A stretch of DNA of 64,000 nt from IMG/VR virus record IMGVR_UViG_3300017971_000185, positions 310,001 to 374,000 of that record; one strand, written 5' to 3'. The notes under the pieces were generated by a model. That model had not been told where the DNA came from. It saw only the letters and a program-made list of their open reading frames with translations, and did not search any database. A program made the translations under genes and the position numbers. Of the stretch, positions 690 to 64,000 are shown piece by piece; within the stretch, counting starts at the first letter, position 1; each line of letters starts with the position of its first letter.

Positions 690-707
690 GTAGTGCGTCC
701 AGAACGC

Positions 708-781
708 GCGCTGAGAGGGGGTCGAACCCTCGACCTTCCGGGCGAATACCCCGGCTGCTCGGCCTACTGAGCTTCCAGCGC
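708..781 (-). ncRNA. tRNA-like cloverleaf with a non-canonical anticodon loop, in the 5' region of the Pth-like gene
   Basis: Acceptor GCGCTGG/TCAGCGC, D arm GCTC/GAGC, stem CCGGG/CCCGG with loop GTATTCG, T arm GAGGG-TTCGACC-CCCTC. Confidence 0.7.
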
Positions 782-20181: not shown

Positions 20182-21609
20182 ATGAAGAAGTCTCGTCACC
20201 TCTACCTCCACCCGGAGACCAATCCGGGCAAGATTGCCGCCCTGGAGGCCCTTCACGTCGAGTACGTCAGGTACGTGCGCATCTGCGTGCAGATCATGCT
20301 CGACAACCAGAGGCTCTCCCTCAAACGGTCGGAGAAGCAAGTCTTCTTCCCGAAGGCCGAGAACCTCACCAGCCAGATCCAGAAGAACGCCCGAGACCAC
20401 GCCATCCAAATCGTGAGTACGTGGGCCAAGGCCACCTACGAGCGTGCCGTCAAGAAGCACCTCACCCGAGCACACAGGTTCGGCCAACTTTCCCAGGACG
20501 AACGACACGCCCTCTGCACGGTTGGAAAGCACCTGATCTCAGTGCCTTGGAAGCACGTCACCCAGGAGACCATCGACGCCTACTGGGCACTCCTGCTCGA
20601 CCCAGAGGTCTCTGGTAACCAGCCACGGGTGTCCGAACGCATCCCGATGCGGATGTCGGAGAACACATGCACACTGGCCGACACTGACGAGGCCATCCAC
20701 GCTCCCATGTGGATCAAGATTTCCACGCTGGTCAGCCGGAAAGTCGTCTGGCTTCCGCTCGCAGGGAATCCCTACGTCAAGTCGGCCAACGACGTGTCGA
20801 AGGGAGTCCACGCAAGGAAAGACAAGCGTGGGCGCTGGAGGTTCGAGGTTGTTGAACGCAAGGAGTGGATCGTTCCCGAACTTCAACCCGATGCGCCCAG
20901 GATCGGTGTCGATGTCGGCCTGAACGTCGTGGCCGCCACCTCGGATGGCCGGACGTTCGGAGCAAGTCTCAAACCCAAGTTCGACCGCCTCTACGAGCGC
21001 GTCAGGAACCTTCGTGCGAACCGTCAACGACAGGGTTTCAAGGAGAACAGCCCTCGGCTCAACCGGCTCGAAGACAAACTCACCAGGATGGTAAAGACGA
21101 TCACCGGGGAGGTGGCCAACAGGCTCATCAAGAGCGCACCCGAAGGCACGGTTTTCGTGATCGAAGACTTGGACCTGCGTGGGTGCCGTGGTCAGAAGAG
21201 GTTCGCGTACCGGGCCCTGGCCCACAGCTTGGAGACGAAAGCGCCCACCTTGAAGGTGAATCCGGCGTACACGTCTCAGACTTGCCCTTCCTGTGGTTAC
21301 GTCTCTCGACGTAACCGATCAGGAACCGATTTCGTCTGCCGCTCATGTGGCAGGCGTTCTCATGCCGACGTGGTGGGAGGGATCAACCTGCTGAGACGTT
21401 CTCAGGACGAACAGGTTGACCTCAACGATCACCATCGAGACGTGAGGGAGTTGCTGCGAAAACGATACCGGGCCCGTAGGGCCGGGGACAGTTCCGCAGG
21501 ACTCTGCCGAAAGGCACCCGCGCCTGAACCGTCAGGCCGGAGGCTCACTACCGGAGTATCTCCCCCGAGGAGAGGACGGCACAGCCTCGAATCCGATGCT
21601 TACCTTTGA
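20182..21609 (+). CDS. tnpB: TnpB RNA-guided RuvC nuclease
   Basis: GVDVG, IEDL, PAYTSQTCPSCG, CRSCG..HADVVGGIN; catalytic D/E/D intact. Confidence 0.9.
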   Translation: MKKSRHLYLHPETNPGKIAALEALHVEYVRYVRICVQIMLDNQRLSLKRSEKQVFFPKAENLTSQIQKNARDHAIQIVSTWAKATYERAVKKHLTRAHRFGQLSQDERHALCTVGKHLISVPWKHVTQETIDAYWALLLDPEVSGNQPRVSERIPMRMSENTCTLADTDEAIHAPMWIKISTLVSRKVVWLPLAGNPYVKSANDVSKGVHARKDKRGRWRFEVVERKEWIVPELQPDAPRIGVDVGLNVVAATSDGRTFGASLKPKFDRLYERVRNLRANRQRQGFKENSPRLNRLEDKLTRMVKTITGEVANRLIKSAPEGTVFVIEDLDLRGCRGQKRFAYRALAHSLETKAPTLKVNPAYTSQTCPSCGYVSRRNRSGTDFVCRSCGRRSHADVVGGINLLRRSQDEQVDLNDHHRDVRELLRKRYRARRAGDSSAGLCRKAPAPEPSGRRLTTGVSPPRRGRHSLESDAYL

Positions 21610-24610: not shown

Positions 24611-24696
24611 TGGTCGGTATGCAAGAGGTTAAAGCAAGCAGTCTGTAAAACTGCCGCGTTCGCGCTTCGTGGGTTCAAATCCCTCCCGGCCAGCCA
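24611..24696 (+). tRNA. tRNA-Tyr(GTA)
   Basis: Type II cloverleaf, loop CT-GTA-AA; unusual T1-A72 and G73. Confidence 0.88.
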
Positions 24697-24722
24697 GATT
24701 CGGAGTAGAAAGGAGAAGAAAC

Positions 24723-25898
24723 ATGACACAGAAGCAGCACATCAACGTAGGAACCATCGGACACGTGGACCACGGGAAGACCACCCTCACGGCGGCCATC
24801 ACGATGGTCATGGCAGCGATCAACGGAGGCGAGATCAAGACCTTCGATCAGATCGACAAGGCGCCCGAGGAGCGTGAGCGAGGAATCACAATCAACACGG
24901 CGCACGTCGAGTACGAGTCGGAGACTCGCAACTACGCGCACATCGACTGCCCAGGCCACGCCGACTACATCAAGAACATGATCGTCGGTGCGTCCCAGAT
25001 GGACGGCGCGGTACTGCTTGTGGACGCTTCTCAGGGGCCGCAGCACCAGACGCGTGAGCACGTTCTCCTGGCGAAACAGGTGGGCGTCTCGCACATGGTG
25101 GTGTTCATCAACAAGGTGGATATTGCAGATCCCGAGATGCTGGAGCTTGTAGAGATGGAGGTTCAAGATGCTCTTGCCCAGATGGGCTTCGAGGACACTC
25201 CGTTTATTCGGGGCTCCGCGCTCAAGGCACTGGAGGCCGCGAGCGAGGGGAAGATGGACGATCCCGAGATCGAGCCAGTCAAGGCGCTCATCGCCGCGAT
25301 GGACGAGCACCTTCCGGTGCCCAAGCGAGATCGGGAGAGTCCGTTTCTCATGCCCATCGAGAATGTCCACACGATTCCAGGCAGGGGCACGGTCGTGACA
25401 GGTCGTGTGGAGAGGGGCATTCTCACCAAGGGGCAGACGGTGGAGATCGTGGGTCGGACGGACGGGAAGCCCCTGGCTGCGGTCGTCACGGGAATCCAAG
25501 CGTTCCACAAGGACATCCCCGAGGCGGCGGCGGGTCTCAACATCGGCATGCTCCTACGTGGCATCGATCGGGATGAAGTCCTGCGTGGTCAGGTAGCAGT
25601 TGCTCCTGGCTCCTTGCTTCCTCACGAGAAAGGCAAGGCCGAGATCTTCACACTCACAGCCAAGGAGGGTGGTCGTCACACTTCGTTCTCTGGCGGATAC
25701 AGGCCACAATTCTACTTTGGCGCCACTGACGTGACTGCGGCAGTCGTGCCGGAGGATGGGAAAGTCGTCGAGCCTGGCGATCGGGCCACGGTGGACTTTG
25801 AGCTAGTGAGTCCGGTTGCTTGCGAGCCCGGCATGAGGTTCGCCATCCGCGAGGGTGGCAAGACCGTAGGTGCTGGGATGGTCACGGAGGTAGTCTAA
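24723..25898 (+). CDS. tuf: elongation factor Tu
   Basis: [50 protein letters not shown]; SD AAGGAG. Confidence 0.97.
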
Positions 25899-32901: not shown

Positions 32902-33049
32902 GGGAGACACAGGATCTCGTTTCGAGGTCACAAGCACGGTAAGACGCAGCATTCATAACGCTGAGACTGTGGGTTCAATCCCCACCCCCGCTTTCATGGC
33001 GGGGTAGTCAAATCGCAAGAACACCTGACACACTCTCCTGTGTCCTCCC
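32902..33049 (+). ncRNA. Y-like RNA: tRNA mimic opened in the D loop, acceptor stem closed, CACAAGC/CACTC module
   Basis: Outer stem GGGAGACACAGGA/TCCTGTGTCCTCCC; order 3' D strand, anticodon arm (CAT), T arm, CCCCGC-loop-GCGGGG, 5' D strand. Confidence 0.75.
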
Positions 33050-33094
33050 GACCCTTCCAGACTTCAACCCGCAACCCGAAAGGAGGACAATCTG

Positions 33095-38974: not shown

Positions 38975-39104
38975 TGAAGCAACCAACCAGACAGGGCTCA
39001 CACGCAAAGTAGCTCATTGGGTAGAGCATCGGTATCGCAAACCGAGGGTAGCTGGTTCAAGTCCAGTCCTTGCAACAAACAAGCTCTTCAACTCGGTTGC
39101 TTCA
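38975..39104 (+). ncRNA. Y-like RNA type B1 (whole tRNA mimic nested inside the module)
   Basis: Outer stem TGAAGCAACC/GGTTGCTTCA; loop ATCGCAA. Confidence 0.75.
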
Positions 39105-39144
39105 CCCATTTTCTGACAATCTTTCTGGCGATCATGCGCAACAC

Positions 39145-39274: not shown

Positions 39275-39404
39275 GAAGCGACCAAACCCGAAAGGGCTCA
39301 CAAGCAAAGAAGCTCATTTGGCTGAGCGTCTCGATCATAACGAGAAGGTAGCTGGTTCAACTCCAGTCCTTGCACTCTGTTCAGCCCCTCAACTCGGTCG
39401 CTTC
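39275..39404 (+). ncRNA. Y-like RNA type B2
   Basis: Paralog of B1; GAAGCGACC/GGTCGCTTC; loop ATCATAA. Confidence 0.75.
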
Positions 39405-39412
39405 CACTATTC

Positions 39413-39556
39413 GATCAACGCCAACAGATCAATCTCACAAGCATTGTTGGTTCGATTCCAACCCCCGCCACTCATGGCGGGGTAGCCAAATGGTAAAGGC
39501 ACCGGTACAAGGAACCGGCGTGAAAACGCAATCAGGTTTTTCACTCGGCGTTGATC
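39413..39556 (+). ncRNA. Y-like RNA type C1 (permuted: T arm, closed acceptor, D arm, anticodon arm)
   Basis: GATCAACGCC/GGCGTTGATC; CCCCGCCA-CTCA-TGGCGGGG. Confidence 0.8.
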
Positions 39557-39612: not shown

Positions 39613-39765
39613 TTGGTCAATGCCAACAGATCAACCTCACAAGCATCATGTTGGTTCGAGTCCAACCTCCCCCACCCATGGGGGAGTAGCCTAACTGGAA
39701 AAGGCACCAGACGTGTAAATCTGGCGTGTAAACGCAATCAAGGTTTCTCACTCGGCGTTGACCAA
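39613..39765 (+). ncRNA. Y-like RNA type C2
   Basis: TTGGTCAATGCC/GGCGTTGACCAA; CTCCCCCA-CCCA-TGGGGGAG. Confidence 0.8.
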
Positions 39766-40737: not shown

Positions 40738-41114
<377 letters not shown>

Positions 41115-53661: not shown

Positions 53662-54117
53662 ATGAGTACGCGAGGCGCAGTAATCGCGGGCAACGACAGT
53701 GTACTGAAAGCAGTACAGAGGGAACGTGCCGCAAAGGCAGGGATCGACACAGAGTACGAGACGCAATTCGTGCTCGAAAGGGACCGCAACCTGCCTTTAC
53801 GGTTCTGGGGGGACAAGATAGGCAGCGGGGTTCGCCAGTTTGAGGACGACAAGGGTTGTGACCGCGGCACGGAAGTGATCATTTATGCCACAACCTCTGG
53901 CAAGATCGTCACTGAGGTTCACCAGTGGAATAATGACCCAAACGGTGAGAGCCGGAGCAGACGCGATGCTGCGGCCCATTCTCGACCGGAAGATGCCCTG
54001 GAGTGGCTCAGGCAGGACGGAAAAGGGTCTCTAGGCCCCGCTAGCAAGGCAGCATGGCTAGAAGCGTGTGAGACGTTTGAACCACTCAAACGCTTTGCCG
54101 TGGAAGATGTGGACTAG
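53662..54117 (+). CDS. hypothetical protein
   Basis: SD AGGAG; repeated leader hairpin upstream. Confidence 0.6.
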   Translation: MSTRGAVIAGNDSVLKAVQRERAAKAGIDTEYETQFVLERDRNLPLRFWGDKIGSGVRQFEDDKGCDRGTEVIIYATTSGKIVTEVHQWNNDPNGESRSRRDAAAHSRPEDALEWLRQDGKGSLGPASKAAWLEACETFEPLKRFAVEDVD

Positions 54118-54125
54118 GATTTAGA

Positions 54126-54400
54126 CGCGTTCAAGTCCCATGCGCCTTAAGGCGTATCGAGATTAGACGGGCCAACAGCATGGATCCGGCTTCTGAGCCC
54201 GATCTCTAGCGTTCTGCGGGTTATGATCGTATGGATCGTGCCTGCGGAGTGAACGTGTCGGCATATCGCTAGGAGATATGACTAAGACTCAGCTATCCAT
54301 GACCAAGCAATGAGATAGGTGTTGTGGCCTCGTCGGAAGCACCTGAAATCATTGGCTTTTCCAAGCAACACCTTGACTCATGCTTTGGTCTTGAACCGTT
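54126..54400 (+). ncRNA. unidentified, highly structured RNA of about 270 nt
   Basis: GTTCAAG/CTTGAAC closing stem; CATGGAT/ATCCATG, ATCTCTAGCG/CGCTAGGAGAT, AGGTGTTG/CAACACCT; G-U pairs favour the + strand. Confidence 0.5.
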
Positions 54401-54468
54401 TCTTATCAAGACGATAACATAAAAAGTCCTGGCGCTGGCCCCCGCACGATCATATAATCCAACTTGTT

Positions 54469-55014
54469 ATGGCTTACGGTGCCATACAGGATCGCTTCTG
54501 GAAGCATGTCCGCAAACAGTCTGATGGCTGCTGGGTCTGGACGGCATCTCTTGATGATGGGTACGGACGGTTCCGTATCAGTCCCTATGAGCGTGTCTAT
54601 GCGCATGTGTGGCTGTATGAGCGCGAGATAGGAGCTGTCCCAGATGGGTACGTCGTTGACCACACATGCCGCAACCGAGCCTGTGTAAATCCCGCTCATC
54701 TGGAAGCCGTGACGAGCGCTGAGAATACGAGACGGGGAGCCTCCACGCCAGGGCAGAACGCTCGTAAGACCCATTGTCATCGGGGTCACGAGTTTACAGC
54801 CGCCAACACCATCTGGAAGGGGAGTCGGCGGAATTGCCGCGAATGCCGACGACTGGACAGAGAAGCTAAGCGGCAAGCTGTCCAGAAGCGACAACCCAAG
54901 CGTCCTCACGCGGCCCAGATCGCAAGAGATCGCAAGAAGGGGCTGACTTGGCAGGAGATCGGTGAGAAGTACGGGGTCGCTGAATCAACGATTCGGAAGT
55001 ACGCCAAACGTTAG
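54469..55014 (+). CDS. HNH homing endonuclease with C-terminal HTH
   Basis: CWVWT..GYGRF, DHTCRNRACVNPAHLEAVT..EN, THCHRGH. Confidence 0.9.
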   Translation: MAYGAIQDRFWKHVRKQSDGCWVWTASLDDGYGRFRISPYERVYAHVWLYEREIGAVPDGYVVDHTCRNRACVNPAHLEAVTSAENTRRGASTPGQNARKTHCHRGHEFTAANTIWKGSRRNCRECRRLDREAKRQAVQKRQPKRPHAAQIARDRKKGLTWQEIGEKYGVAESTIRKYAKR

Positions 55015-56265
55015 CTAGCCTATTGAACGATGGGGTTAGAACGTGGGTCGTACAGCGCGGCCCGAAACAGGAGACAAACAATGAGAAACCCCACCGGTTG
55101 TGATGTCGTGCTTCGTTGGTTCCTAGCGCACCGAGAGGAGCGTCGTGCCTTGCTTGCTAAGTTGCCTCCCGAGGAGAAACCCAAGGAGATCCGGGTAGGT
55201 CTCGGAGGCAGGTTTCCCGTCGTGTTTACGGATGATTGCCACGATTGTCCGCACCGGAAGTGATTGATGGGTTGGGCTGATCGAAGCATTGCCGTCAAGG
55301 CTGTTCAAGGCCACGGCAAGAAACGTCGCTTCTTGATCGGAAACAACCGTGGAGGCATCAACGGCTGGGTCAGTCGCAACGGCGTGTTTGGGGTCGTTAC
55401 GAAGGTCGCAGATTGAGGCTATAGGTAGCGGTTGGTATGGACCCGTCCCTGAGACACGAGCCGGTTCTGGACGGCAGCGAGGAGCCGTACAAATTCATCG
55501 TGCGGGCTGAGGGCATCCCCTCGCGGGGTTCTGCCGGATCGGTCCTCGCGATCACAGGTCATGTCTGTCGGCACTGTGGGTGTCTCTACGACCCTGTGGT
55601 GGAGGCGATTTGCGCGACGCGATGGTTCCGGGCAGAGGAACGGAGACGCCATGTCTGACGAGGTCTCGTGGCCCAGCTCGTTAGATATCGATTGCTCTAT
55701 CTCATGCCATCTGAGGGCACCCGCTACGAAAGTGCCTCTAGTGAGTTTCGCACGTTGCGGGGTTTGATCGTCTTCATCAAGAAGATACAAGAGGACGGAG
55801 GATCGGTGCGAAGTGTCGAAAAATGGGAACAGACCGAATGGACCCCACAGGAGTTGCGGATGGTCCGGTCTTTGTTGGGTGTGGAGTTGCCGGGTAGAAT
55901 CAAAACATGAGCCTCCTTCATGATCTACTCGACGCCTTACCCGAGTGGGAACGAAAGCATGCCCTTGCCCGTCTCGATCATGAGCTTTCTCCTGCTGCAC
56001 AGGAGGCCGATTGGATTGTCATAGAGCAGCCTTACGGGACTGTTCTGCATCCCGGTCCGCAGGCGGAAGCCGACCTGTATCGGAGACGGTGTGATACGCG
56101 CCGTCGCGTTTACGAGGAGCTAGTCAAGGAGCTAGGTGTTGAGGACAAGCTAGCGATCGAGCAGGACCCGCGATGGAGATACCCGCTCGGAGATGGCATT
56201 GAGCCTTCTGCGCCGGTCCTCTTGGGTCGCGTGTGGGTAGTGGTTGACGCTCGGTAAGGTGTGGC

Positions 56266-56880
56266 ATGGCAATTACTCGGAGGGCTTTTGGCAAGCTGCT
56301 TGGAGCAGTAGGGGCGGCGCTCGGCACCGGCTTCGTTCCGTTGGATGTCCTGGCGCGTCCCTCTGTTCTGGAATCGCTCTTGCCGTTTGTGGGCACCTAC
56401 GAATTCCGTCGTCTCATTCCGCGTGAGAATTCGATTTACGGAGCCGTTTCCAACGATGGCTCAGAGATCTGGAAAACCATTGAAGGACGTGATCCTGAAT
56501 CAGGGATTCGCACACCCGGCACCCGCGAAACTACCACCCTTGCCAAAATGCTTGCGGGAACGTTCAAAACCTCACCAGACGGGACATTCGCCGTTGTCAT
56601 AGTTGGTCCCGGTCTGGCAGGCCACGCCAAGAACGTCCGAACGAAAGGCGTGCAAGTGGTGGTCGAGAAATCACAGCCGGACCGTGATGTGTTCGTGATT
56701 GCCGGACTCAACAAGCCGATCAAGGCTCTCGAAGATCTCGATCCGCGATGCCTGGCACGAGTCACGTTGGGGCATCATGGGCCTTTCATCGGAGCCACAC
56801 GCGACGATTACCCCACAGGATGGAAGGCTTCTAGGCCCTGGGCTCCAGTCCTGTTGTACCGGCCCGATCGGGGCAGTTGA
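56266..56880 (+). CDS. hypothetical protein with a Tat-like signal
   Basis: MAITRRAFGKLLGAVGAALG. Confidence 0.5.
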   Translation: MAITRRAFGKLLGAVGAALGTGFVPLDVLARPSVLESLLPFVGTYEFRRLIPRENSIYGAVSNDGSEIWKTIEGRDPESGIRTPGTRETTTLAKMLAGTFKTSPDGTFAVVIVGPGLAGHAKNVRTKGVQVVVEKSQPDRDVFVIAGLNKPIKALEDLDPRCLARVTLGHHGPFIGATRDDYPTGWKASRPWAPVLLYRPDRGS

Positions 56881-56883
56881 CGC

Positions 56884-56912
56884 TTGACAAGGGCTCAGAG
56901 GGCGCGTAGAGT
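56884..56912 (+). promoter_or_regulatory. sigma70-like promoter of the Arg/Ser/Gly/Ala/Trp/Cys tRNA operon
   Basis: TTGACA-N17-TAGAGT. Confidence 0.75.
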
Positions 56913-56927
56913 CTCCCTGAGGTCAAA

Positions 56928-57080
56928 ATGTTTACCCCAGTCCAAACCATCGTTGAGAACGCACGCTACGCAGCACCCGCCATTGCGGCTGCCGCCGCGG
57001 GATCGTGTGCCTCCGATTGGTCAGGACTCGGTACACGGCCCAGTAGTGGTGCTCTGTCCAGGCAGAGACGCTCCGTTTAG
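56928..57080 (+). CDS. leader peptide MFTPVQTIVENARYAAPAIAAAAAGSCASDWSGLGTRPSSGALSRQRRSV
   Basis: SD GAGGT; 11 Ala, 7 Ser, 4 Gly, plus TGT, TGG and AGG/AGA. Confidence 0.75.
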   Translation: MFTPVQTIVENARYAAPAIAAAAAGSCASDWSGLGTRPSSGALSRQRRSV

Positions 57081-57085
57081 CACGC

Positions 57086-57161
57086 GGGGCACTAGCTCAA
57101 AGGACAGAGCTTCCGGCTTCTAACCGGACGGGTGCGGGTTCAAATCCCGCGTGCCCTACCA
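57086..57161 (+). tRNA. tRNA-Arg(TCT)
   Basis: Cloverleaf with CCA. Confidence 0.92.
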
Positions 57162-57200
57162 CTACTGGGCGGAACCAAGGACGCCGCCCAACGACAACCT

Positions 57201-57289
57201 GGAGCGGTGGCCGAGTCTGGCTGAAGGCATCGCCCTGCTAAGGCGACATACCCGCAAGGGTATCGAGGGTTCAAATCCCTCCCGCTCCG
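57201..57289 (+). tRNA. tRNA-Ser(GCT)
   Basis: Type II cloverleaf. Confidence 0.93.
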
Positions 57290-57298
57290 CAAAATCAA

Positions 57299-57385
57299 GG
57301 AACGGTGGCCGAGTCTGGCTGAAGGCGCTCGACTGGAAATCGAGTGTAGGGAAACCTACCGGGGGTTCAAATCCCTCCCGTTCCG
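57299..57385 (+). tRNA. tRNA-Ser(GGA)
   Basis: Type II cloverleaf. Confidence 0.93.
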
Positions 57386-57402
57386 CCCGAAAGGAGAATC
57401 TA

Positions 57403-57641
<239 letters not shown>

Positions 57642-57673
57642 ACATTTTCACAACAACCCAAACCAAGAACCAA

Positions 57674-57762
57674 GGAGAGTTGGCCGAGTCTGGCTGAAGG
57701 CGTCGCATTCGAAATGCGAAGTGGGTGAAAGCTCACCAGGGGTTCGAATCCCTTACTCTCCG
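57674..57762 (+). tRNA. tRNA-Ser(CGA)
   Basis: Type II cloverleaf. Confidence 0.93.
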
Positions 57763-57767
57763 CCCAC

Positions 57768-57838
57768 GCGCGCGAAGTGTTATGGCTGCACGCTTCCCTG
57801 CCTAGGAAGAAGTAGGGGTTCGATTCCCCTTGCGCGCT
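57768..57838 (+). tRNA. tRNA-Gly(GCC)
   Basis: Cloverleaf, U73. Confidence 0.88.
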
Positions 57839-58100
57839 CGAAAGGAACAAGCCATGAACGAAGGAGGCAAGTAAGGAAAAACTGGCGTCAGTGCCGCCTA
57901 GAACGAAGGGAAGGAAGCTGCACAGTCGAGCACACATGCTGGTTGCCTGAGAAAGTGGTCAAGGTGGGGAAGGTCGTGAAGGTCATGGGGGCAACCTGGA
58001 AGATCACCGCAGCGTGGACAATCCTTTCGTACCGGCCCGACTGGCGAAGGGCTATCCGAAAGCATCGGCACGAAACAGGAGACGATCAACCGAAGAAGTC

Positions 58101-58172
58101 GCGTGTGTAGCTCAGTTGGCAGAGCATCAGCTTCCATGCTGAGGGTCGCGGGTTCGATCCCCGCCACATGCT
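58101..58172 (+). tRNA. tRNA-Gly-type body with a 6-nt anticodon loop (probably a defective Gly(CCC))
   Basis: TCAGC-TTCCAT-GCTGA. Confidence 0.65.
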
Positions 58173-58191
58173 CGAAAGGAAGAACATGAAC

Positions 58192-58264
58192 GCGGGAGTA
58201 GCTCAACTGGTAGAGCGTCAGCCTTCCAAGCTGAATGTAGCGGGTTCGACCCCCGTCTCCCGCT
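58192..58264 (+). tRNA. tRNA-Gly(TCC)
   Basis: Cloverleaf. Confidence 0.93.
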
Positions 58265-58267
58265 CAA

Positions 58268-58340
58268 GGGGCCTTAGCTCAGTTGGGAGAGCGGTGGCTT
58301 TGCAAGCCACAGGCCGCCGGTTCGATTCCGGCAGGCTCCA
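58268..58340 (+). tRNA. tRNA-Ala(TGC)
   Basis: G3:U70. Confidence 0.93.
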
Positions 58341-58559
58341 CGGAAGAACATGAGTCAACGAATCAACCATCGTCGGGAAGGAAAGAGGCATCAAGACAAC
58401 GGGCCTCGATGGAAGAGCAGAAACCCCATGGCGGGGGCAAACTCGACACACGTAGCACGCGCACGAAGGGGATGGCGAAACATCCTACGACGGAGGAAAA
58501 GGCGAAAGATCAAAGATGTGATTCAGCAGCATCTAGCCGAGATGGGGTAGTAGCGAACA

Positions 58560-58934
58560 ATGGCACAGATCACCAAAGAACAGGTCATTGACTATCTGGG
58601 GGCCCTCTCGCCTTCGGAAATGGCTATCCTCATCGAGAACCTGGAAGAGACGTGGGGCATGGAGATGTCCCGGCCAACTCAGCAAGCACCGAAGGTCGAG
58701 CAAGAGAAGGAGGAAGAACAGACGGAATTCGAGGTCATACTTGAGAGTTTCGGAGACAAGAAGATCGACGTGATCAAGACCGTTCGCCAGGAGAAGCCGG
58801 GGATGGGTCTCAAGGAAGCAAAGGAGTTTGTCGAGTCTGCGCCGGTTACGATCGGTGAGGCGCTCTCAAAGGAGGAAGCAGAGGAAGCCAAGGCCAAGCT
58901 GGAGGAGGCAGGCGCAACGATCACGATCAAGTAA
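58560..58934 (+). CDS. rplL: 50S ribosomal protein L7/L12
   Basis: EEQTEFEVIL..GDKKIDVIK.VR...GLKEAKEFVESAP..SKEEAE..KAKLEEAGA. Confidence 0.95.
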   Translation: MAQITKEQVIDYLGALSPSEMAILIENLEETWGMEMSRPTQQAPKVEQEKEEEQTEFEVILESFGDKKIDVIKTVRQEKPGMGLKEAKEFVESAPVTIGEALSKEEAEEAKAKLEEAGATITIK

Positions 58935-59007
58935 GGGGCAGTAGCTCAGATGGGAGAGCGCGTGTCTGGCAGACACGAAGTCAGGGGTTCGATCCCCCTC
59001 TGCTCCA
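58935..59007 (+). tRNA. tRNA-Ala(GGC)
   Basis: G3:U70. Confidence 0.93.
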
Positions 59008-59013
59008 CAATCA

Positions 59014-59072
59014 AGGGACGTAGCTCAATGGAAGAGTGCCGGAAGCTGCGGGTTCGAATCCCGTCGTCTCCA
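59014..59072 (+). ncRNA. anticodon-arm-less tRNA-Ala-like RNA
   Basis: Acceptor with G3:U70 and A73; D and T arms present; only GCCGGAAGCT between them. Confidence 0.65.
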
Positions 59073-59086
59073 CAAAGGCAAGCAAC

Positions 59087-59644
59087 ATGAGGAAGGACAA
59101 ACACACACGGACATCGAAGCTGTTGTCCATGCTTCTGCGCCATCGGCCAGAGGCCGCGGGTCTCGTGTTGGATGAGGCCGGCTGGGTTGGTGTGGATGAG
59201 TTGCTCGCGGGAATCGGGAACAAACGAGGATTCGAAGTGACTAAAGACTTGCTTCGGCAAGTCGTAGATACCAACAACAAGAGGAGGTTTGAATTCAACG
59301 AAGACGGGACCAAGATTAGAGCCAGACAAGGCCATAGCGTGCGTGTGGATCTGGGGCACGAAGCCCAGGAGCCGCCCGAGTACCTGTACCACGGAACGGC
59401 AACTCGAAACCTCGCAGCGATTCGCGAGGGAGGGCTTCAGAAGATGAGCCGACACGCGGTTCATCTCTCACTCGATCTACCAACGGCAACCAGTGTTGGA
59501 TCTCGGCACGGGAAGCCAGCCATTCTCAAGATCCGGGCGAAGCAGATGCACGATGATGGCCACGTGTTCTACCTGACGGAGAACAAGGTCTGGTACACCG
59601 ACAACATCCCCGTCGCCTACATCATCTTTCCAGAGGACTCGTGA
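59087..59644 (+). CDS. kptA: RNA 2'-phosphotransferase
   Basis: SKLLSMLLRH.P, KRRF, IRARQGHS, LYHGT, R.AVHLS. Confidence 0.95.
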   Translation: MRKDKHTRTSKLLSMLLRHRPEAAGLVLDEAGWVGVDELLAGIGNKRGFEVTKDLLRQVVDTNNKRRFEFNEDGTKIRARQGHSVRVDLGHEAQEPPEYLYHGTATRNLAAIREGGLQKMSRHAVHLSLDLPTATSVGSRHGKPAILKIRAKQMHDDGHVFYLTENKVWYTDNIPVAYIIFPEDS

Positions 59645-59719
59645 GGGGCAGTAGCTCAGTTTCGGGAGAGCGCCACGTTCGCAACGTGGAAGTCAGGGGT
59701 TCGATTCCCCTCTGCTCCA
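59645..59719 (+). tRNA. tRNA-Ala(CGC)
   Basis: G3:U70. Confidence 0.92.
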
Positions 59720-60034
59720 CAATATTTCGTCACCATCGAAAAGGACAGAAGGAACAACATGTAATCATCAACAAGGAGGTCGTCATCATGCGTACCGTAT
59801 ATGCAGACCTGAACATGCGTAACCGAACCCGTGACTGGAAGATCCCGCTCGGAGGCAATACCGTTTCCCTGCGTGCGATTGCAAAGCCGGGCACGGTGGT
59901 CCGTGTGACTGACGACGATCTAGAGGTCGAGGCTATGGTCGAGATCCGCAACGGGATGCTCGTTGCGGACGCCCGCTGGAACACGCTGGCGTATGTCCAC
60001 TAGACCAGGCCCGGCTAAGCAAGGAGGAAAGCGT

Positions 60035-60067
60035 ATGGAACACGAACGATGGCGAGGCTGTCCGTAA
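60035..60067 (+). CDS. leader peptide MEHERWRGCP
   Basis: SD AAGGAGG; TGG and TGT codons; stop lies in the loop of a GCTGTCC/GGACAGC hairpin, just before tRNA-Trp and tRNA-Cys. Confidence 0.7.
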   Translation: MEHERWRGCP

Positions 60068-60075
60068 GGACAGCT

Positions 60076-60148
60076 AGGGCGTTAGCTCAGTTGGGAGAGC
60101 GACGGACTCCAAATCCGTAGGTCGCGGGTTCGATCCCTGCACGCCCTG
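60076..60148 (+). tRNA. tRNA-Trp(CCA)
   Basis: Cloverleaf. Confidence 0.93.
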
Positions 60149-60152
60149 CCGC

Positions 60153-60224
60153 GGCTCCGTAGCCAAGTGGGAAGGTAGCGCTCTGCAAAAGCGCCATTCG
60201 TCGGTTCGACTCCGACCGGAGCCT
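60153..60224 (+). tRNA. tRNA-Cys(GCA)
   Basis: Cloverleaf, U73. Confidence 0.93.
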
Positions 60225-60295
60225 CCGCGATGAAACAACCGAACGACAACTAGCCCCCAGGGGTCTCGCTGCTCCTGGGCAACAGGAGCAAGACG

Positions 60296-60730
60296 ATGAC
60301 CAGCCTGGCATACAAGACTACCTACGACACTCTGACTACCGAGGGTCTCCCGAAGCGGGGGACTCGTGACTGGTACCTGGCAAAGCGAGCCAGGAAGCTG
60401 GGAAGGGTGAAGGGTCGGGGGCGAGTCGCCAAGTTTCGAGAGATCGCGCGGTACAAGCCCGTGTTGATTGCTGATCTTATTCTTGGGCGATTGCCCCGTA
60501 TCCTAGAGAGCGAATTCTGGTTCTACGTCTGGCACGTGGACGGTTTGTGCGTCTACTGCAAGGCCAAGCTCACCAAGCAAAACCACACTCTGGATCACGT
60601 AATCCCGCGTGCCCAGGGCGGTGGTCAGCTTGGTCGCCAGAACCTCATGCCCTGCTGTCAGGCGTGCAACTGGACCAAGGCCGACAAGCCTCTATTGGTG
60701 TTCCTGTCCGAGCGACTAGAACACCTTTAG
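60296..60730 (+). CDS. HNH endonuclease
   Basis: CVYC..TLDHVIPRAQGG..NLMPCCQACN..K. Confidence 0.85.
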   Translation: MTSLAYKTTYDTLTTEGLPKRGTRDWYLAKRARKLGRVKGRGRVAKFREIARYKPVLIADLILGRLPRILESEFWFYVWHVDGLCVYCKAKLTKQNHTLDHVIPRAQGGGQLGRQNLMPCCQACNWTKADKPLLVFLSERLEHL

Positions 60731-61114
60731 GATCTCGTTGATCGTGGCCTGCGTGTACTCTTCGACCGCATCACGGCCGGCAGACAGAGTATCGGGGCTA
60801 TTCGCTCCGGCGTCTCGATGCTTGTAGCCTACACGCTTGAGATTCTCCAGCGACTTGTGGACTGCACGCGCGAGCGCCTTGCCTAGCTTGTCGATCTCAT
60901 TGTTGCCTTTCACCAAGGCGGCGGTGAGATCGCGAGCGGCATCATGGGTGCCTTCGTAGTCCGAGTCGAGGCCCCATGCTTCGGGCTTGCTACGGTAGAT
61001 GCTCGGATACTGCGCTTGCTTGAGCAGCGGAAGGATCGCTTCTTGGATATTGGGGTTTTCGTGAGCCAGCCTGATCAACTGGCCGCGGAGGCTGCGTTTG
61101 CGTGTGCCTGCCAT
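60716..61114 (-). CDS. hypothetical protein with N-terminal LR..LIRLA...P.....LPLLK motif
   Basis: Motif shared with 2309..2998. Confidence 0.6.
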   Translation of the reverse strand: MAGTRKRSLRGQLIRLAHENPNIQEAILPLLKQAQYPSIYRSKPEAWGLDSDYEGTHDAARDLTAALVKGNNEIDKLGKALARAVHKSLENLKRVGYKHRDAGANSPDTLSAGRDAVEEYTQATINEILKVF

Positions 61115-61205
61115 GGTCTACCTACGGTGCGCGATAGGCGAATTAGGCGCGGGGTTTGCGCTGTAAACTTCTGTGGGAATCCCGCGTAGAGGGTCGGAGA
61201 GAGGA

Positions 61206-61598
61206 ATGGCAAGAACCACTTCAGATCCATGCGGCCGATGCGGCGGAAGCGGCTATCTTCCGCAGTATCGTCATGTCGAGGGCGGTGTTTGCTTTCGGTG
61301 CCGGGGAAGCGGCATTGATCCTGGGGGTCGCCGTGGGGGTCGCCGGGCCAAGAGGCTCTCAGACGAAGCCAGGGGCTTCCTGGCGGCGTTGGTGGAGAGC
61401 AGAATCTCGCTGCCCCCGCAAGAGCCGGAGCCGCTGGACGAGCTTCTGGGCGCTGGGCTCGTTGCTCCCGTGAGGGTGGTGGACAAGACCGGGAAAAAGC
61501 GCTCCGAGTACTACGCGACGGAGCGTGGGCACGAGAGCTATCAAAAGGCTGTAGAGGCGGGGTTGATTCGGGCCCGGCCAGGGGAATGGGTGCAGTGA
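61206..61598 (+). CDS. DnaJ-type CxxCxGxG zinc-finger protein
   Basis: CGRCGGSG..CFRCRGSG; directly after the phage promoter at 61162. Confidence 0.65.
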   Translation: MARTTSDPCGRCGGSGYLPQYRHVEGGVCFRCRGSGIDPGGRRGGRRAKRLSDEARGFLAALVESRISLPPQEPEPLDELLGAGLVAPVRVVDKTGKKRSEYYATERGHESYQKAVEAGLIRARPGEWVQ

Positions 61599-62586
61599 TG
61601 AAGATCCTTCCGTCCTATTTGAGAGCGAAAGCCCTCGATGCGCTGGCACGGCTTGACGGCTTGCCGCCTTACGATGGGCCTTCCAACATCTGTCGGAACG
61701 ACGGCTACTACGCGCAGTCCATCGAACAGACGTTTGGCATGTCCATCGTGGATCTGCGCAAGAGTGTGGAGAGAGACAATGGATGACGTAGCTCGAATTC
61801 GTGAGGCGCAGGAGCATCTCTACGTTGCTGTCCTGCAATCGCTCAAGACGGATGATGACATCATCATGGGGCACGTTCGCGATGCTCTGGATCAACTGGA
61901 TCAGGTTCTCGGCGGCAACTATCCGGCGCGAACCCGTGAGATGCTCGAAAGGAAGGGGCTGAGATGAGCGAGTCACCGAGAGGTAGTATCAAGTCTCCGA
62001 TTCGTCCGTTTGGCGACGCTTATTGGGAGCGAGTCGAGCGCAGCAGGGACGGACAGACAGGAGCCGAATGTTGTCTTTGCGGCAGACCGGGACGTGGTGT
62101 TGGTCGTTTCTTCATCGCGATTGATCTGGGCGATCATTCGCTCTATCCGGCCACTTTCGACGTGGATACTCTGGGTGGAGACTTCTCTGTTGAGCGCGTA
62201 GGGAGCACTTGTGCTCGGAAACTTCGCGGGCTCGGGGCGCTACGCGACGTAGACGGAAACCCTGTGGATTGAGACCCGGATCAGGCGTAGAATCCACTGA
62301 TGCTGCGCCGATTCCGACAGTGGGTTCGCCAATGGCTCGACGTTCCGACTGTGGGGCGTGAGTCCGAGGACTTTGCTCGGAGTGAGACAATGGCTGTAGT
62401 GGGTGCTCTGGTGCAGCAGTGTCCCTCGTTGATCTACTATCCTGAGCTTATTCGCTTCATGGTCGGCGGCATCGGCGGCATCAACGGAATCTACGAGTTT
62501 ACCCACGTGGCGACTGGCCGCTGGGTCTGGACCGGAGGCCGCTGGGTTCACGAGTCGCGGCAGAAACCGGGTCTGAAGGTGGTGAA

Positions 62587-63312
62587 ATGACACAAGACGA
62601 GCAGAGACAACAGTTGTTCGATGCGCTGCCCGGTGACATCCGTCAGCAGTTTCATGATCTTCTACAGAGTCGCCAAATTTCCATCTACTGGTCCGATGGC
62701 GAGTACGGCGCGAGACCGTTGACGCATAGTGAAATGTCGGCCATTCTCGATCTCTTGATCGACTCGATCGGATCGGAGGTTGCGCTTCGCTTCACGAAGG
62801 AAGCGAGGTTCCGGTCTCCGCGGGATGAACCAACCGGGGAGGAGTTGGAAGAGGTCATCAAGGCGGGATGGGACCGCACGAAACTCTGGCCCTCGCAGAA
62901 GCCGGAGCCCGTGGAGATCACGGACGTGAGAGCAAAGCTCTGGCAGAGAGGGCAGCTTGCTTCCTATCTGTACTCGACAGATTGGCAATTCCAGAACGAA
63001 GACCGTCCCTTTATCGCTGTGTCTCGTTCTCCAGGGTATCTGGCGCACCTAGAGACGGGGGTTCTTGACGCACAGTCCTACGAAGGGCTGCTGCGCCAGA
63101 TAGACTTCGGCCGGTGGGGGTTTCCATTCGACGGCGTGGTGTACGAGCGTTTTTTCAATCGGGGTTCGCAGGTCTGGTTCAAGATCAGAGGATCGTTCAA
63201 TTTTTGGCGAAAGTACTGGCCTGATGACGACGTGTTGATGAAGGCTCGCAAAACCGTTCTGCCTCCGGGGGCAGAGATCAACGATGGTGACAGGGGCAGG
63301 GGCAGGGGATGA
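62587..63312 (+). CDS. hypothetical protein
   Basis: 241-aa ORF with an ATGA overlap. Confidence 0.55.
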   Translation: MTQDEQRQQLFDALPGDIRQQFHDLLQSRQISIYWSDGEYGARPLTHSEMSAILDLLIDSIGSEVALRFTKEARFRSPRDEPTGEELEEVIKAGWDRTKLWPSQKPEPVEITDVRAKLWQRGQLASYLYSTDWQFQNEDRPFIAVSRSPGYLAHLETGVLDAQSYEGLLRQIDFGRWGFPFDGVVYERFFNRGSQVWFKIRGSFNFWRKYWPDDDVLMKARKTVLPPGAEINDGDRGRGRG

Positions 63313-63636
63313 CCAAAATTCTCCGCTTTCTCCGTTTCTTTTCCCTGCGCTGTTATCCGTTTTTGGCTTGTAGCAGGCATGGGCGTTGCTGGACACATTC
63401 GGAGTGGGCAGACGATGGAGATCACAGACGAGATCGGTAGGGAGATCTGGAACAAGCTGATCGAGCACTGTGGCGCTCGCGACATGCCTGAGTGGGAGCT
63501 TGCCAGTACGTTCACTCGTGCGCTTCGTGAGTACTTCATAGAGCGTCGTGAGAAGGTCGGCCGTGCTAGCTGGCCTTTCGAGTGGCGCTTTCAAGGAGTG
63601 CTAGGGTTTCGCCACCAAGACGGCGATGGGTTCTAC

Positions 63637-64000
63637 GTCAACTACCTCCGGCTAAAGCCGGAGGCTTGTACCTGAGATCTCCCCATGGAGTTGTCCCGAT
63701 ACCTTGATCTCCTGACGGAGACCGTTTGGCCGATTGACTGCGGCCCTGGCACGGATGTTCCGCGCCGCGATGATGTCGGCAGGCCCAGCGTGCCCGCACG
63801 ACTCACAACAAAACCTGTCCCTCGTCGGCCTGTTCTTCCTCGAACAATGCCCGCACTCAGGACAGGTCTGGCTCGTGTACGCGGGATCGACGGCAACCAC
63901 GGGAACCCCAGCCAACAACGCCTTGTACTCGATGAATGCGCGCTGTTGATGAAAGGACCAGCCGTGCAGTCGTGCTCGCTGTCGGCGGCGGGCCGTTACC
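63637..64000 (-). mobile_element. tnpB: IS200/IS605-family element: right end and tnpB C-terminus (partial; continues beyond the window)
   Basis: VDPAYTSQTCPECG..CESCG..ADIIAARNI; terminal hairpin CCTCCGGC-TAAA-GCCGGAGG next to a GTCAAC end. Confidence 0.85.

What the first reader, a model, noticed from the sequence alone, without database searches (positions are those of the whole stretch)
56884..57161. Ala/Ser/Gly/Cys/Trp/Arg leader is antisense to the first tRNA of its operon
The 50-codon leader covers all four Ser isoacceptor classes (TCG, TCC, TCA, AGT), all four Ala codons, GGA/GGT, TGT, TGG and AGG/AGA. These match the downstream Arg(TCT), Ser x4, Gly x3, Ala x3, Trp and Cys tRNAs. GCTCTGTCC (57051-57059) is a perfect complement of the tRNA-Arg D arm GGACAGAGC (57102-57110), and GTGCTCTG can pair with the acceptor strand CGGGGCAC. 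The operon also carries rplL and kptA.
Basis: partly seen in the sequence, partly recalled or inferred. Interest (0 to 1): 0.75.

Follow-up and report, generated by a model that had tools for sequence, protein, structure and literature searches.

The report
Antisense leader masking a phage tRNA-Arg
In a 497-kb phage, the RNA just upstream of the first tRNA of a 13-tRNA cluster carries a perfect 22-base stretch complementary to that tRNA and its 3' end. This looks like a built-in mask or processing helix for the tRNA; there is no good evidence for a codon-sensing leader peptide.

Summary
That gives 22 contiguous antisense bases, and 12 more imperfect pairs reach the acceptor 5' strand.

Attaching the natural leader to the tRNA gains -27 kcal/mol, against -5.8 +/- 3.0 for shuffled leaders (z -7). 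This is the only such outlier among the phage's 46 tRNAs.

A TTGACA-17-TAGAGT promoter lies upstream. The same hexamers and spacing precede another tRNA gene.

The leader-peptide reading is not supported:
- The codon 'coverage' is reached by 5-10% of mechanical ORFs of that size.
- The coding score is poor.
- No homologue exists.
- AGG/AGA follow from the D-arm-like sequence itself.

No relative carries the leader, so conservation cannot be tested. The only distant relative found has tRNA-Arg(TCT) 3 nt after tRNA-Cys.

Best reading (inferred, 0.4): a cis-acting antisense leader that masks tRNA-Arg(UCU) in the precursor. Rivals are a plain RNase III-type stalk (0.2), a neutral relic (0.3) and translation-gated control (0.07).

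In passing: a family of circularly permuted tRNA-like RNAs in the same arrays.

The parts
56884..56912 (+). Sigma-70-type promoter TTGACA-17 nt-TAGAGT; predicted start near 56919-56921.
   Evidence: It is the only 10/12 match in 54000-64000. It is one of 7 such sites on both strands of the 497-kb genome. Identical hexamers and spacing lie on the minus strand at window 900, about 90 nt upstream of the tRNA at 706-781, and TTGACG-17-TAGAGT lies at genome 11780.
56919..56922 (+). Shine-Dalgarno-like GAGG, 5 nt before the ATG. It would sit at the very 5' end of a transcript from the promoter.
   Evidence: Sequence. The SD-like core is enriched at this distance before long ORFs of the genome: 34% against a 15% background.
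56928..57080 (+). 50-codon ORF (ATG...TAG); coding status doubtful. The stop codon lies in the loop of the leader/tRNA hairpin, 5 nt before the tRNA.
   Evidence: weak codon score; codon content not beyond chance; no homologue.
56930..57036 (+). Long imperfect hairpin formed by the first two thirds of the leader.
   Evidence: Fold of 56919-57037: -42.7 kcal/mol, z -1.9, 8 of 200 shuffles as good. Weak on its own.
57038..57050 (+). 5' arm of a 13-bp perfect leader-trailer helix (GCCCAGTAGTGGT).
   Evidence: the repeat finder I2. The longest leader/tRNA complement among the 46 tRNAs. Unique in the genome.
57051..57059 (+). Anti-D segment (GCTCTGTCC), contiguous with the 13-nt arm and complementary to tRNA positions 17-25.
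   Evidence: the repeat finder I5. Pair probability 0.99 in the folded precursor, against 0.007 for the D stem.
57061..57076 (+). Imperfect anti-acceptor segment: 12 pairs, three of them G-U, with 57084-57097. It contains a D-arm mimic (GGCAGAG) that can instead form a 6-bp local hairpin with 57052-57057.
   Evidence: MFE pair list. The alternative local hairpin appears in the cloverleaf-constrained fold.
57086..57161 (+). tRNA-Arg(TCT) with encoded CCA and a G1-U72 pair; first tRNA of the cluster.
   Evidence: ARAGORN; Rfam RF00005 67.7 bits.
57158..57170 (+). 3' arm of the 13-bp helix: discriminator A, CCA and 9 nt of trailer.
   Evidence: I2.
57201..60226 (+). Rest of the same-strand cluster. 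It holds 12 further tRNAs (four Ser, three Gly, three Ala, Trp, Cys), rplL (58560-58934) and kptA/tpt1 (about 59084-59644), plus two tRNA-like elements. An HNH gene follows at 60296-60730.
   Evidence: No plus-strand terminator-like site between 56900 and 64000. Co-transcription is inferred, not shown.

Best explanation
The last 40 nt of a roughly 170-nt promoter-proximal leader are a cis-acting antisense ('anti-tRNA') element.

In the primary transcript:
- 57038-57050 pairs with the discriminator, CCA and trailer.
- The abutting 57051-57059 pairs with the D arm.
- 57061-57076 pairs imperfectly with the acceptor 5' strand.

The result is that the acceptor stem, the D stem, the free CCA end and the RNase P site (57085/57086) are all sequestered, while the anticodon and T hairpins stay intact. 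tRNA-Arg(UCU) can mature only after the leader is cut away, degraded or unwound. The element would therefore set the yield or timing of this one tRNA relative to the 12 tRNAs transcribed behind it.

Shown: the promoter-like site, the pairings, their statistical exceptionality, and their uniqueness in the genome.
Inferred: that the RNA adopts this fold in vivo, that it slows RNase P, and what releases it.
For: - 22 contiguous perfect antisense nt, split over two tRNA segments.
- Interaction energy of the natural leader with the tRNA is -27.0 kcal/mol, against -5.8 +/- 3.0 for shuffled leaders (z -7.0). It is the only outlier among 46 tRNAs; the next are -2.5 and -2.2.
- 57038-57170 folds with z -7.3.
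- In MFE folds of the growing transcript the antisense pairs form as soon as their partners are present, and the acceptor and D stems never form.
- A D-arm mimic in the leader offers a competing 1:2 against 1:3 pairing, the layout of a switch.
- Perfect pairing over 22 nt next to about 50% DNA-level identity in the adjoining arm argues against uniform neutral decay.
- Contiguity on the antisense strand of two target segments that lie 47 nt apart is what selection for one coaxial RNA helix would give.
- The promoter consensus is shared with a second tRNA transcription unit.
- Masking of the 5' leader is known to block bacterial RNase P in engineered constructs (PMC8925977).
- Other tRNA-like units of this phage are also enclosed by 9-13-bp flank-to-flank helices with compensatory changes between paralogues.
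Against: - There is one genome only. Every other copy found is the same phage with no difference.
- The only distant relative found has tRNA-Arg(TCT) 3 nt after tRNA-Cys with no leader, and none of its 37 tRNAs shows a complement longer than 9 nt.
- Thermodynamic 'misfolding' in context is not specific. 16 of 46 tRNAs have an acceptor-stem probability of 0.02 or less when folded with their flanks. The 8 kcal/mol advantage of the masked fold is matched by tRNA-His and a tRNA-Met.
- The energy model ignores tRNA tertiary structure.
- No RNA data were listed.
- The hairpin part alone has p about 0.05.
Confidence: 0.4

Rival explanations
1. Plain processing stalk. The 13-bp leader-trailer helix, stacked either on the 9-bp helix (22 bp in all) or on the acceptor stem (20 bp), is a double-strand-specific cleavage site of the RNase III type. 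It detaches tRNA-Arg and the leader from the polycistronic precursor, as in rRNA operons and the T4 tRNA cluster. The pairing with the tRNA body has no regulatory meaning.
For: - The 13-bp helix is the strongest single element.
- In the cloverleaf-constrained fold it stacks directly under the acceptor stem.
- 13 + 9 = 22 bp is about two helical turns, the usual RNase III substrate length (my knowledge).
- E. coli RNase III takes part in maturation of T4 tRNAs (PMC4810235).
- Flank-to-flank helices recur around other tRNA-like units of this phage.
Against: - It does not explain why the 9 nt abutting the arm are a perfect complement of the D arm (about 2.6e-4 by chance).
- A cut inside the 13-bp helix would not change the predicted balance between the masked and cloverleaf folds.
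- The phage encodes no detectable RNase III, so a host enzyme would be needed.
- The other 45 tRNAs do without such a stalk.
Confidence: 0.2
2. Neutral relic. The leader carries the remains of an inverted partial copy of the tRNA gene (fold-back synthesis, template switching or recombination in a fast-evolving tRNA array). The RNA structure is tolerated, not selected.
For: - Single occurrence, absent from the only relative found.
- tRNA arrays of the two phages are completely rearranged.
- HNH and TnpB genes lie nearby.
- A weaker palindrome centred just upstream of the 5' end is also seen at tRNA-His, which hints at a mutational process.
Against: - A single inverted copy would continue into position 26 onward rather than jump to position 73. 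That needs an extra exact 47-nt deletion with no microhomology at its ends (sequence), or two template switches landing side by side.
- 22/22 perfect next to about 50% identity is unlikely for one event of one age (0.75^22 is about 0.002 at the average divergence).
- The sequence is unchanged in samples from sediment and sea water. This carries little weight, because no variation was seen anywhere in the 5 kb examined.
Confidence: 0.3
3. Translation-gated maturation. Ribosomes translating the 50-codon ORF unwind the antisense segment. Pausing at AGG (57060) and AGA (57066), codons read by tRNA-Arg(UCU) itself, would keep the mask open when that tRNA is scarce, which gives negative feedback.
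For: - ATG with GAGG at the optimal spacing.
- The antisense segment lies wholly inside the ORF (codons 37-50), and the stop codon is in the hairpin loop.
- Forcing 57051-57080 single-stranded, as a ribosome with AGA in the A site would, restores 20 of 21 cloverleaf pairs.
Against: - Poor coding score.
- No homologue, and the ORF was not called as a gene.
- The SD would sit at the extreme 5' end of the promoter's transcript.
- The AGR codons are a by-product of the D-arm-like sequence and appear in two of three frames.
- Two AGR codons in 50 has p about 0.12 at the phage's usage.
- The Ser/Ala/Gly/Cys/Trp 'coverage' is not beyond chance.
- No leader ORF precedes the other tRNA gene that has the same promoter.
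Confidence: 0.07
4. The ORF encodes a genuine small protein (an Ala-rich hydrophobic stretch followed by Cys, faintly signal-peptide-like), and its overlap with the tRNA complement is incidental.
For: SD-like site and ATG; hydrophobic AAPAIAAAAAGSC segment.
Against: No homologue; weak coding score; not a canonical lipobox (my reading); leaves the 22-nt complement unexplained.
Confidence: 0.03

Closest known systems
Leader-trailer processing stalks of stable-RNA precursors (RNase III stems of rRNA operons; RNase III-dependent maturation of the phage T4 tRNA cluster, PMC4810235)
   Same: Sequences flanking a stable RNA in a polycistronic precursor pair over a long distance. Here the element sits at the first tRNA of a phage tRNA cluster.
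   Different: The leader strand runs on without a break into the tRNA body (D arm, acceptor 5' strand). The helix also includes the discriminator and CCA, so the stalk competes with the cloverleaf instead of merely enclosing it.
Engineered RNase P riboswitches (Ender et al. 2021; PMC8925977)
   Same: A hairpin involving the 5' leader directly upstream of a tRNA blocks RNase P cleavage until it is opened.
   Different: Those are synthetic and ligand-controlled through a theophylline aptamer. They mask only the 7-nt leader and are designed to leave the tRNA fold intact. Here there is no recognisable aptamer (no Rfam hit) and the tRNA itself is invaded.
Leader-peptide transcription attenuators (trp, his, leu, thr, pheST)
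   Same: A short ORF with an SD behind a promoter, and mutually exclusive pairings (1:2 against 1:3) that overlap the ORF.
   Different: There is no terminator hairpin with a U tract and no run of regulatory codons. The controlled product is a tRNA. The ORF has weak coding signal and no conservation.
T-box riboswitches
   Same: A leader UGGU pairs with the ACCA end of a tRNA.
   Different: There is no Stem I or specifier, no T-box sequence and no Rfam RF00230 match. The pairing is in cis with an unprocessed tRNA and extends into the trailer.
Huge phages with large tRNA sets and translation genes (Al-Shayeb et al. 2020, PMC7162821)
   Same: A genome of about 0.5 Mb with 46 tRNAs, EF-Tu, L7/L12, and a 1,510-aa protein with a poly(A) polymerase/CCA-adding-type head domain.
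   Different: As far as I know, that work does not describe leader structures of the tRNA clusters.

Membership tests
Leader-peptide transcription attenuator | Intrinsic terminator (GC-rich hairpin followed by a U tract) between the leader ORF and the regulated gene | tested here: not met
   No plus-strand terminator-like site in 56900-64000. The hairpin 57051-57110 is followed by UUCCGG.
Leader-peptide transcription attenuator | Leader ORF enriched in codons of the regulated pathway beyond chance | tested here: not met
   26/50 codons fall in the set, reached by 5.2% of 1,823 mechanical ORFs. 14 distinct codons are reached by 10.5%. Two AGR codons in 50 has p about 0.12.
Leader-peptide transcription attenuator | Translated short ORF with a ribosome-binding site | tested here: inconclusive
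   GAGG lies 5 nt before the ATG, but the coding score is weak and there is no homologue.
Leader-peptide transcription attenuator | Mutually exclusive RNA pairings overlapping the ORF | tested here: met
   57052-57057 pairs either with 57062-57067 or, as part of 57051-57059, with 57102-57110.
T-box riboswitch (RF00230) | Match to the covariance model (Stem I, specifier loop, T-box antiterminator) | tested here: not met
   No Rfam family other than tRNA in 56850-57200 at E up to 10.
RNase III processing stalk | Helix of about 20 bp or more formed by the sequences flanking a stable RNA | tested here: met
   13 bp between leader and trailer. It stacks to 22 bp with the anti-D helix, or to 20 bp with the acceptor stem.
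RNase III processing stalk | Cleavage by RNase III | not testable with these tools
   No RNA reads were listed. The phage has no RNase III domain.
Bacterial tRNA gene (RF00005) | Score above the gathering threshold, a cloverleaf and an anticodon | tested here: met
   67.7 bits against a threshold of 29. ARAGORN calls Arg(TCT). The tRNA alone folds into a cloverleaf at -34.5 kcal/mol.
Sigma-70-type promoter | -35 and -10 hexamers at 16-18 nt spacing, recurring before comparable genes | tested here: met
   10/12 match. Identical hexamers and spacing precede the tRNA at 706-781. Activity was not tested.
YrlA-type Y RNA (RF02553), considered for the permuted tRNA-like elements noticed in passing | Score above gathering, and a neighbouring Ro60/TROVE gene | tested here: not met
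   20-26 bits against a threshold of 69. No TROVE domain in the genome. The order T arm, acceptor hairpin, D arm is shared.

The most novel reading that the evidence does not exclude
A phage tRNA gene autoregulated through its own leader. The 22-nt antisense element keeps pre-tRNA-Arg(UCU) unprocessable, and ribosomes pausing at the AGG/AGA codons of the overlapping 50-codon ORF open it only when tRNA-Arg(UCU) is limiting. This would be a translation-coupled gate acting on tRNA maturation rather than on transcription termination.
Probability: 0.07. Interest if true: 0.85.

Novelty: new variant of a known kind. Interest (0 to 1): 0.45.

Why it matters
All tRNAs of a polycistronic cluster are transcribed in equal amounts. 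How a phage with 46 tRNAs adjusts individual tRNA levels is unknown.

A natural leader that is perfectly antisense to its own tRNA would be a simple way to tune or time one tRNA. The tRNA here reads AGA/AGG, codons that phages often supplement. Such a leader would also be a natural counterpart of the engineered RNase P riboswitches.

The element is compact (133 nt) and can be tested directly in vitro. If it proves to be a relic, it still records how inverted tRNA fragments arise in fast-evolving phage tRNA arrays.

Tried and rejected
Search for relatives with an orthologous leader:
- Phage GenBank blastn gave only tRNA-Ser matches.
- IMG/VR scans with the upstream protein, KptA, L7/L12, a 1,510-aa protein and the tRNA 5' half returned the identical phage, or unrelated contexts without tRNAs.
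- The upstream 204-aa protein has only one 42% relative, in a different context.
- A metagenome scan with a degenerate tRNA-Arg core found only the same phage.

Population variation: four DNA runs show no difference in the leader.

RNA evidence: no RNA run was listed.

Other ideas rejected:
- The 13-mer as a dispersed repeat: it occurs only at the two arms.
- A paralogous leader elsewhere in the genome: none.
- A known RNA family in the leader: none.
- A pseudo-tRNA on the minus strand of the leader: no Rfam hit.
- 'Predicted misfolding' as an argument on its own: dropped after the control showed it for a third of all tRNAs.
- RNAduplex z-scores on long flanks were too noisy to use.
- TerL Pfam families gave no hit in the genome, so relatives were sought with other large proteins.

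Full report
CONTEXT. The window is bases 310001-374000 of a single 497,194-bp virus record, 58% G+C, estimated 94% complete. All 46 of its tRNA genes lie between 310 and 376 kb; 44 are in the window. The same stretch encodes an EF-Tu homologue, ribosomal protein L7/L12, an RNA 2'-phosphotransferase (Tpt1/KptA), an HNH endonuclease and TnpB-like proteins. Elsewhere the genome has intein-bearing RNR and PolA and a 1,510-aa protein with a poly(A) polymerase/CCA-adding-type head domain. This is a 'huge phage' of the kind described by Al-Shayeb et al. 2020 (PMC7162821).

THE OBSERVATION.

Taken alone, two of these are not beyond chance.
- An exact complement of 9 nt or more between a tRNA and its upstream 150 nt occurs for 7 of the 46 tRNAs. 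The hairpin between the leader and the tRNA 5' half has p about 0.05 against shuffled leaders.
- The share of leader codons read by the downstream tRNAs (26 of 50) is reached by 5.2% of 1,823 mechanical ORFs of 40-60 codons. The 14 distinct codons are reached by 10.5%.

The 9-mer is immediately preceded by 13 nt (57038-57050) that are a perfect complement of 57158-57170, that is, the discriminator base, the encoded CCA and nine trailer bases. So 22 contiguous leader bases are perfectly antisense to two tRNA segments 47 nt apart. Downstream, 57061-57076 adds 12 imperfect pairs (three of them G-U) with 57084-57097, the acceptor 5' strand and the start of the D stem.
- The 13-mer occurs nowhere else in the genome and the leader has no paralogue.
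- The segment 57038-57170 folds at -75.5 kcal/mol, z -7.3.
- Joining the natural 60-nt leader to the tRNA gains -27.0 kcal/mol, against -5.8 +/- 3.0 for shuffled leaders (z -7.0). The next best of the other 45 tRNAs are -2.5 and -2.2.
- Contigs from four independent metagenome runs cover the region without a single difference, so it is not an assembly artefact.

SURROUNDINGS. TTGACA-17-TAGAGT at 56884-56912 is the only 10/12 sigma-70-like site in 10 kb and one of seven in the whole genome. The same two hexamers with the same spacing lie on the minus strand about 90 nt upstream of another tRNA gene (706-781), and TTGACG-17-TAGAGT precedes a protein gene at genome 11780. By my estimate, two of seven sites falling within 200 nt upstream of tRNA units has a chance of about 3e-4, so the promoter is probably real. 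Its predicted start (about 56919-56921) would put the GAGG of the ORF at the very 5' end of the RNA. No plus-strand terminator-like site follows before 64000. The 'operon' is therefore inferred from strand and spacing and is not shown. The leader matches no Rfam family even at E up to 10.

IS THE ORF A GENE? In favour, there is an ATG with GAGG 5 nt upstream, the distance at which SD-like cores peak before long ORFs of this phage. Against:
- The frame-specific codon score is 2.5/1.8, whereas real 50-codon windows average 16/18. Some 6.6% of real windows score as low, and 14.6% of spurious ORFs score as high.
- No homologue exists, and the ORF itself is absent from the protein collection.
- The other tRNA unit with the same promoter has no comparable ORF.
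- The AGG and AGA codons sit in GGCAGAGAC, a near-copy of the D-arm sequence GGACAGAGC. Such a sequence carries an AGR triplet in two of three frames, so their presence is not evidence of design.

WHAT THE RNA WOULD DO.
- In the energy model, MFE folds of the growing transcript form the antisense pairs as soon as their partners are present. In the full precursor the anti-D pair has probability 0.99, the D stem 0.007 and the acceptor stem about 0.
- The best fold that keeps the cloverleaf retains the 13-bp helix stacked under the acceptor stem and a 6-bp local hairpin (57052-57067). It is 8 kcal/mol worse.
- Holding 57051-57080 single-stranded restores 20 of 21 cloverleaf pairs.
- Caution: predicted loss of the acceptor stem in context is common in this genome (16 of 46 tRNAs), and two other tRNAs have equal or larger energy gaps. 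The argument therefore rests on the exceptional, perfect and contiguous complementarity, not on the fold prediction.

COMPARATIVE EVIDENCE. None is available. All other copies found are the same phage. The one distant relative is a 199-kb contig that shares a 58%-identical protein domain and carries 37 tRNAs. Its array is completely rearranged: tRNA-Arg(TCT) sits 3 nt after tRNA-Cys and is not alignable beyond the universal tRNA positions. No tRNA there has a long upstream complement.

INTERPRETATION.
- Best reading (0.4): a cis-acting antisense leader that masks the acceptor end, the D stem and the RNase P site of pre-tRNA-Arg(UCU), and so gates or tunes the maturation of this one tRNA. The closest precedent is engineered: hairpins that mask the 5' leader block RNase P until opened (PMC8925977).
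- Plain RNase III-type stalk (0.2): this has a natural precedent in rRNA operons and in T4 tRNA maturation (PMC4810235), but it does not explain the abutting perfect anti-D segment. The phage has no RNase III of its own.
- Neutral relic of an inverted duplication (0.3): this fits the single occurrence and the fluid arrays. It needs an exact 47-nt deletion or two adjacent template switches, and it fits poorly with 22/22 perfect pairs next to about 50% identity.
- Translation-gated control with AGR feedback (0.07): not excluded, but there is no positive evidence beyond the SD-like site.
- A real small protein (0.03): leaves the complement unexplained.

SIDE FINDINGS. Flank-to-flank helices of 9-13 bp recur around tRNA-like units in this phage.

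Three elements (39411-39556, 39613-39765, 57494-57641) have the order T arm, acceptor-stem hairpin, D arm, anticodon-like arm, extra hairpin, all closed by a helix of the two ends. That is a circularly permuted tRNA layout, and helices are kept through compensatory changes between copies.
- A covariance model built from them finds a full-length match in the distant relative's tRNA array (E 4e-9) and a partial one at 32968-33069.
- Contigs of another organism in the same samples match 57534-57619 across the junction.
- They resemble YrlA-type Y RNAs (PMC4201824), but they score far below the Rfam threshold and the phage has no detectable Ro60/TROVE gene.

The paralogous tRNA-like genes at 39003 and 39303 are each enclosed by a 10-bp helix with one compensatory change.

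VERDICT. The leader-peptide interpretation is not supported, while the antisense relation is real and statistically exceptional. Function is inferred only. Interest is moderate (0.45): an unusual, cleanly testable structure, but a single unconserved instance.

Noticed in passing
window 57494-57641; 39411-39556; 39613-39765; partial 32968-33069; L020 6148-6285: A family of circularly permuted tRNA-like RNAs: T arm, then an acceptor-stem hairpin, D arm, an anticodon-like arm without U33, and an extra hairpin, all closed by a 9-12-bp helix of the two ends. Helices are kept through compensatory changes between copies. A model built from the three finds a full-length match in a distant huge phage. 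The layout resembles YrlA, but the elements score below the Rfam threshold and the genome has no TROVE/Ro60 gene. ARAGORN misses them.
   Followed up: partly
window 39003-39076 and 39303-39375, with flanks 38975-39107 and 39275-39406: Two paralogous tRNA-like genes (called Ala-CGC and Met-CAT) have mismatched acceptor pairs 1-72 and 6-67. Each is enclosed by a 10-bp leader-trailer helix (TGAAGCAACC/GGTTGCTTCA against GAAGCGACC/GGTCGCTTC) with one compensatory change. Each is preceded by a T-arm-like fragment that belongs to a long tRNA-like unit.
   Followed up: partly
window 58101-58173: A tRNA with a 6-nt anticodon loop (TTCCAT) and a G3-U70 pair (the alanine identity element). ARAGORN gives no amino acid. 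Contigs of other organisms in the same samples carry one more C at 58133.
   Followed up: no
window 59014-59072: A tRNA-like element (Rfam tRNA, 44 bits) with acceptor, D and T arms but no anticodon arm. It lies between tRNA-Ala(GGC) and the ATG of kptA/tpt1 and overlaps the mechanical GTG start of that ORF.
   Followed up: no
window 706-781 (minus strand), promoter at 900-872: A tRNA called Asn with anticodon ATT and an odd anticodon loop (GTATTCG). It is driven by the same TTGACA-17-TAGAGT promoter as the Arg cluster and has no leader complementarity.
   Followed up: partly
window 24669-25898: A full-length EF-Tu homologue (all three domains) sits inside the tRNA region, directly after tRNA-Tyr.
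   Followed up: no
window 40740-40826: The leader of tRNA-His(GTG) forms a long imperfect hairpin with tRNA positions 1-40, including a 7-bp match to the anticodon loop. It is the second-strongest leader/tRNA interaction (z -2.5 to -2.8) and may be chance.
   Followed up: partly
window 56788-56801 and 57004-57017: A 14-nt inverted repeat (13/14) between the 3' end of the upstream 204-aa gene (twin-arginine-like signal, no Pfam family) and the middle of the leader. About 0.04 expected by chance in this region.
   Followed up: no
window 20182-21609 and 63652-63918 (minus strand): TnpB/Cas12f-like ORFs (OrfB_IS605 plus a zinc-ribbon domain) within and beside the tRNA arrays.
   Followed up: no
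genome 405580-410460, 164955-169154, 463663-467778, 450981-455513 (outside the window): An intein-bearing ribonucleotide reductase and DNA polymerase A, a further intein host protein, and a 1,510-aa protein with a poly(A) polymerase/CCA-adding-type head domain.
   Followed up: no
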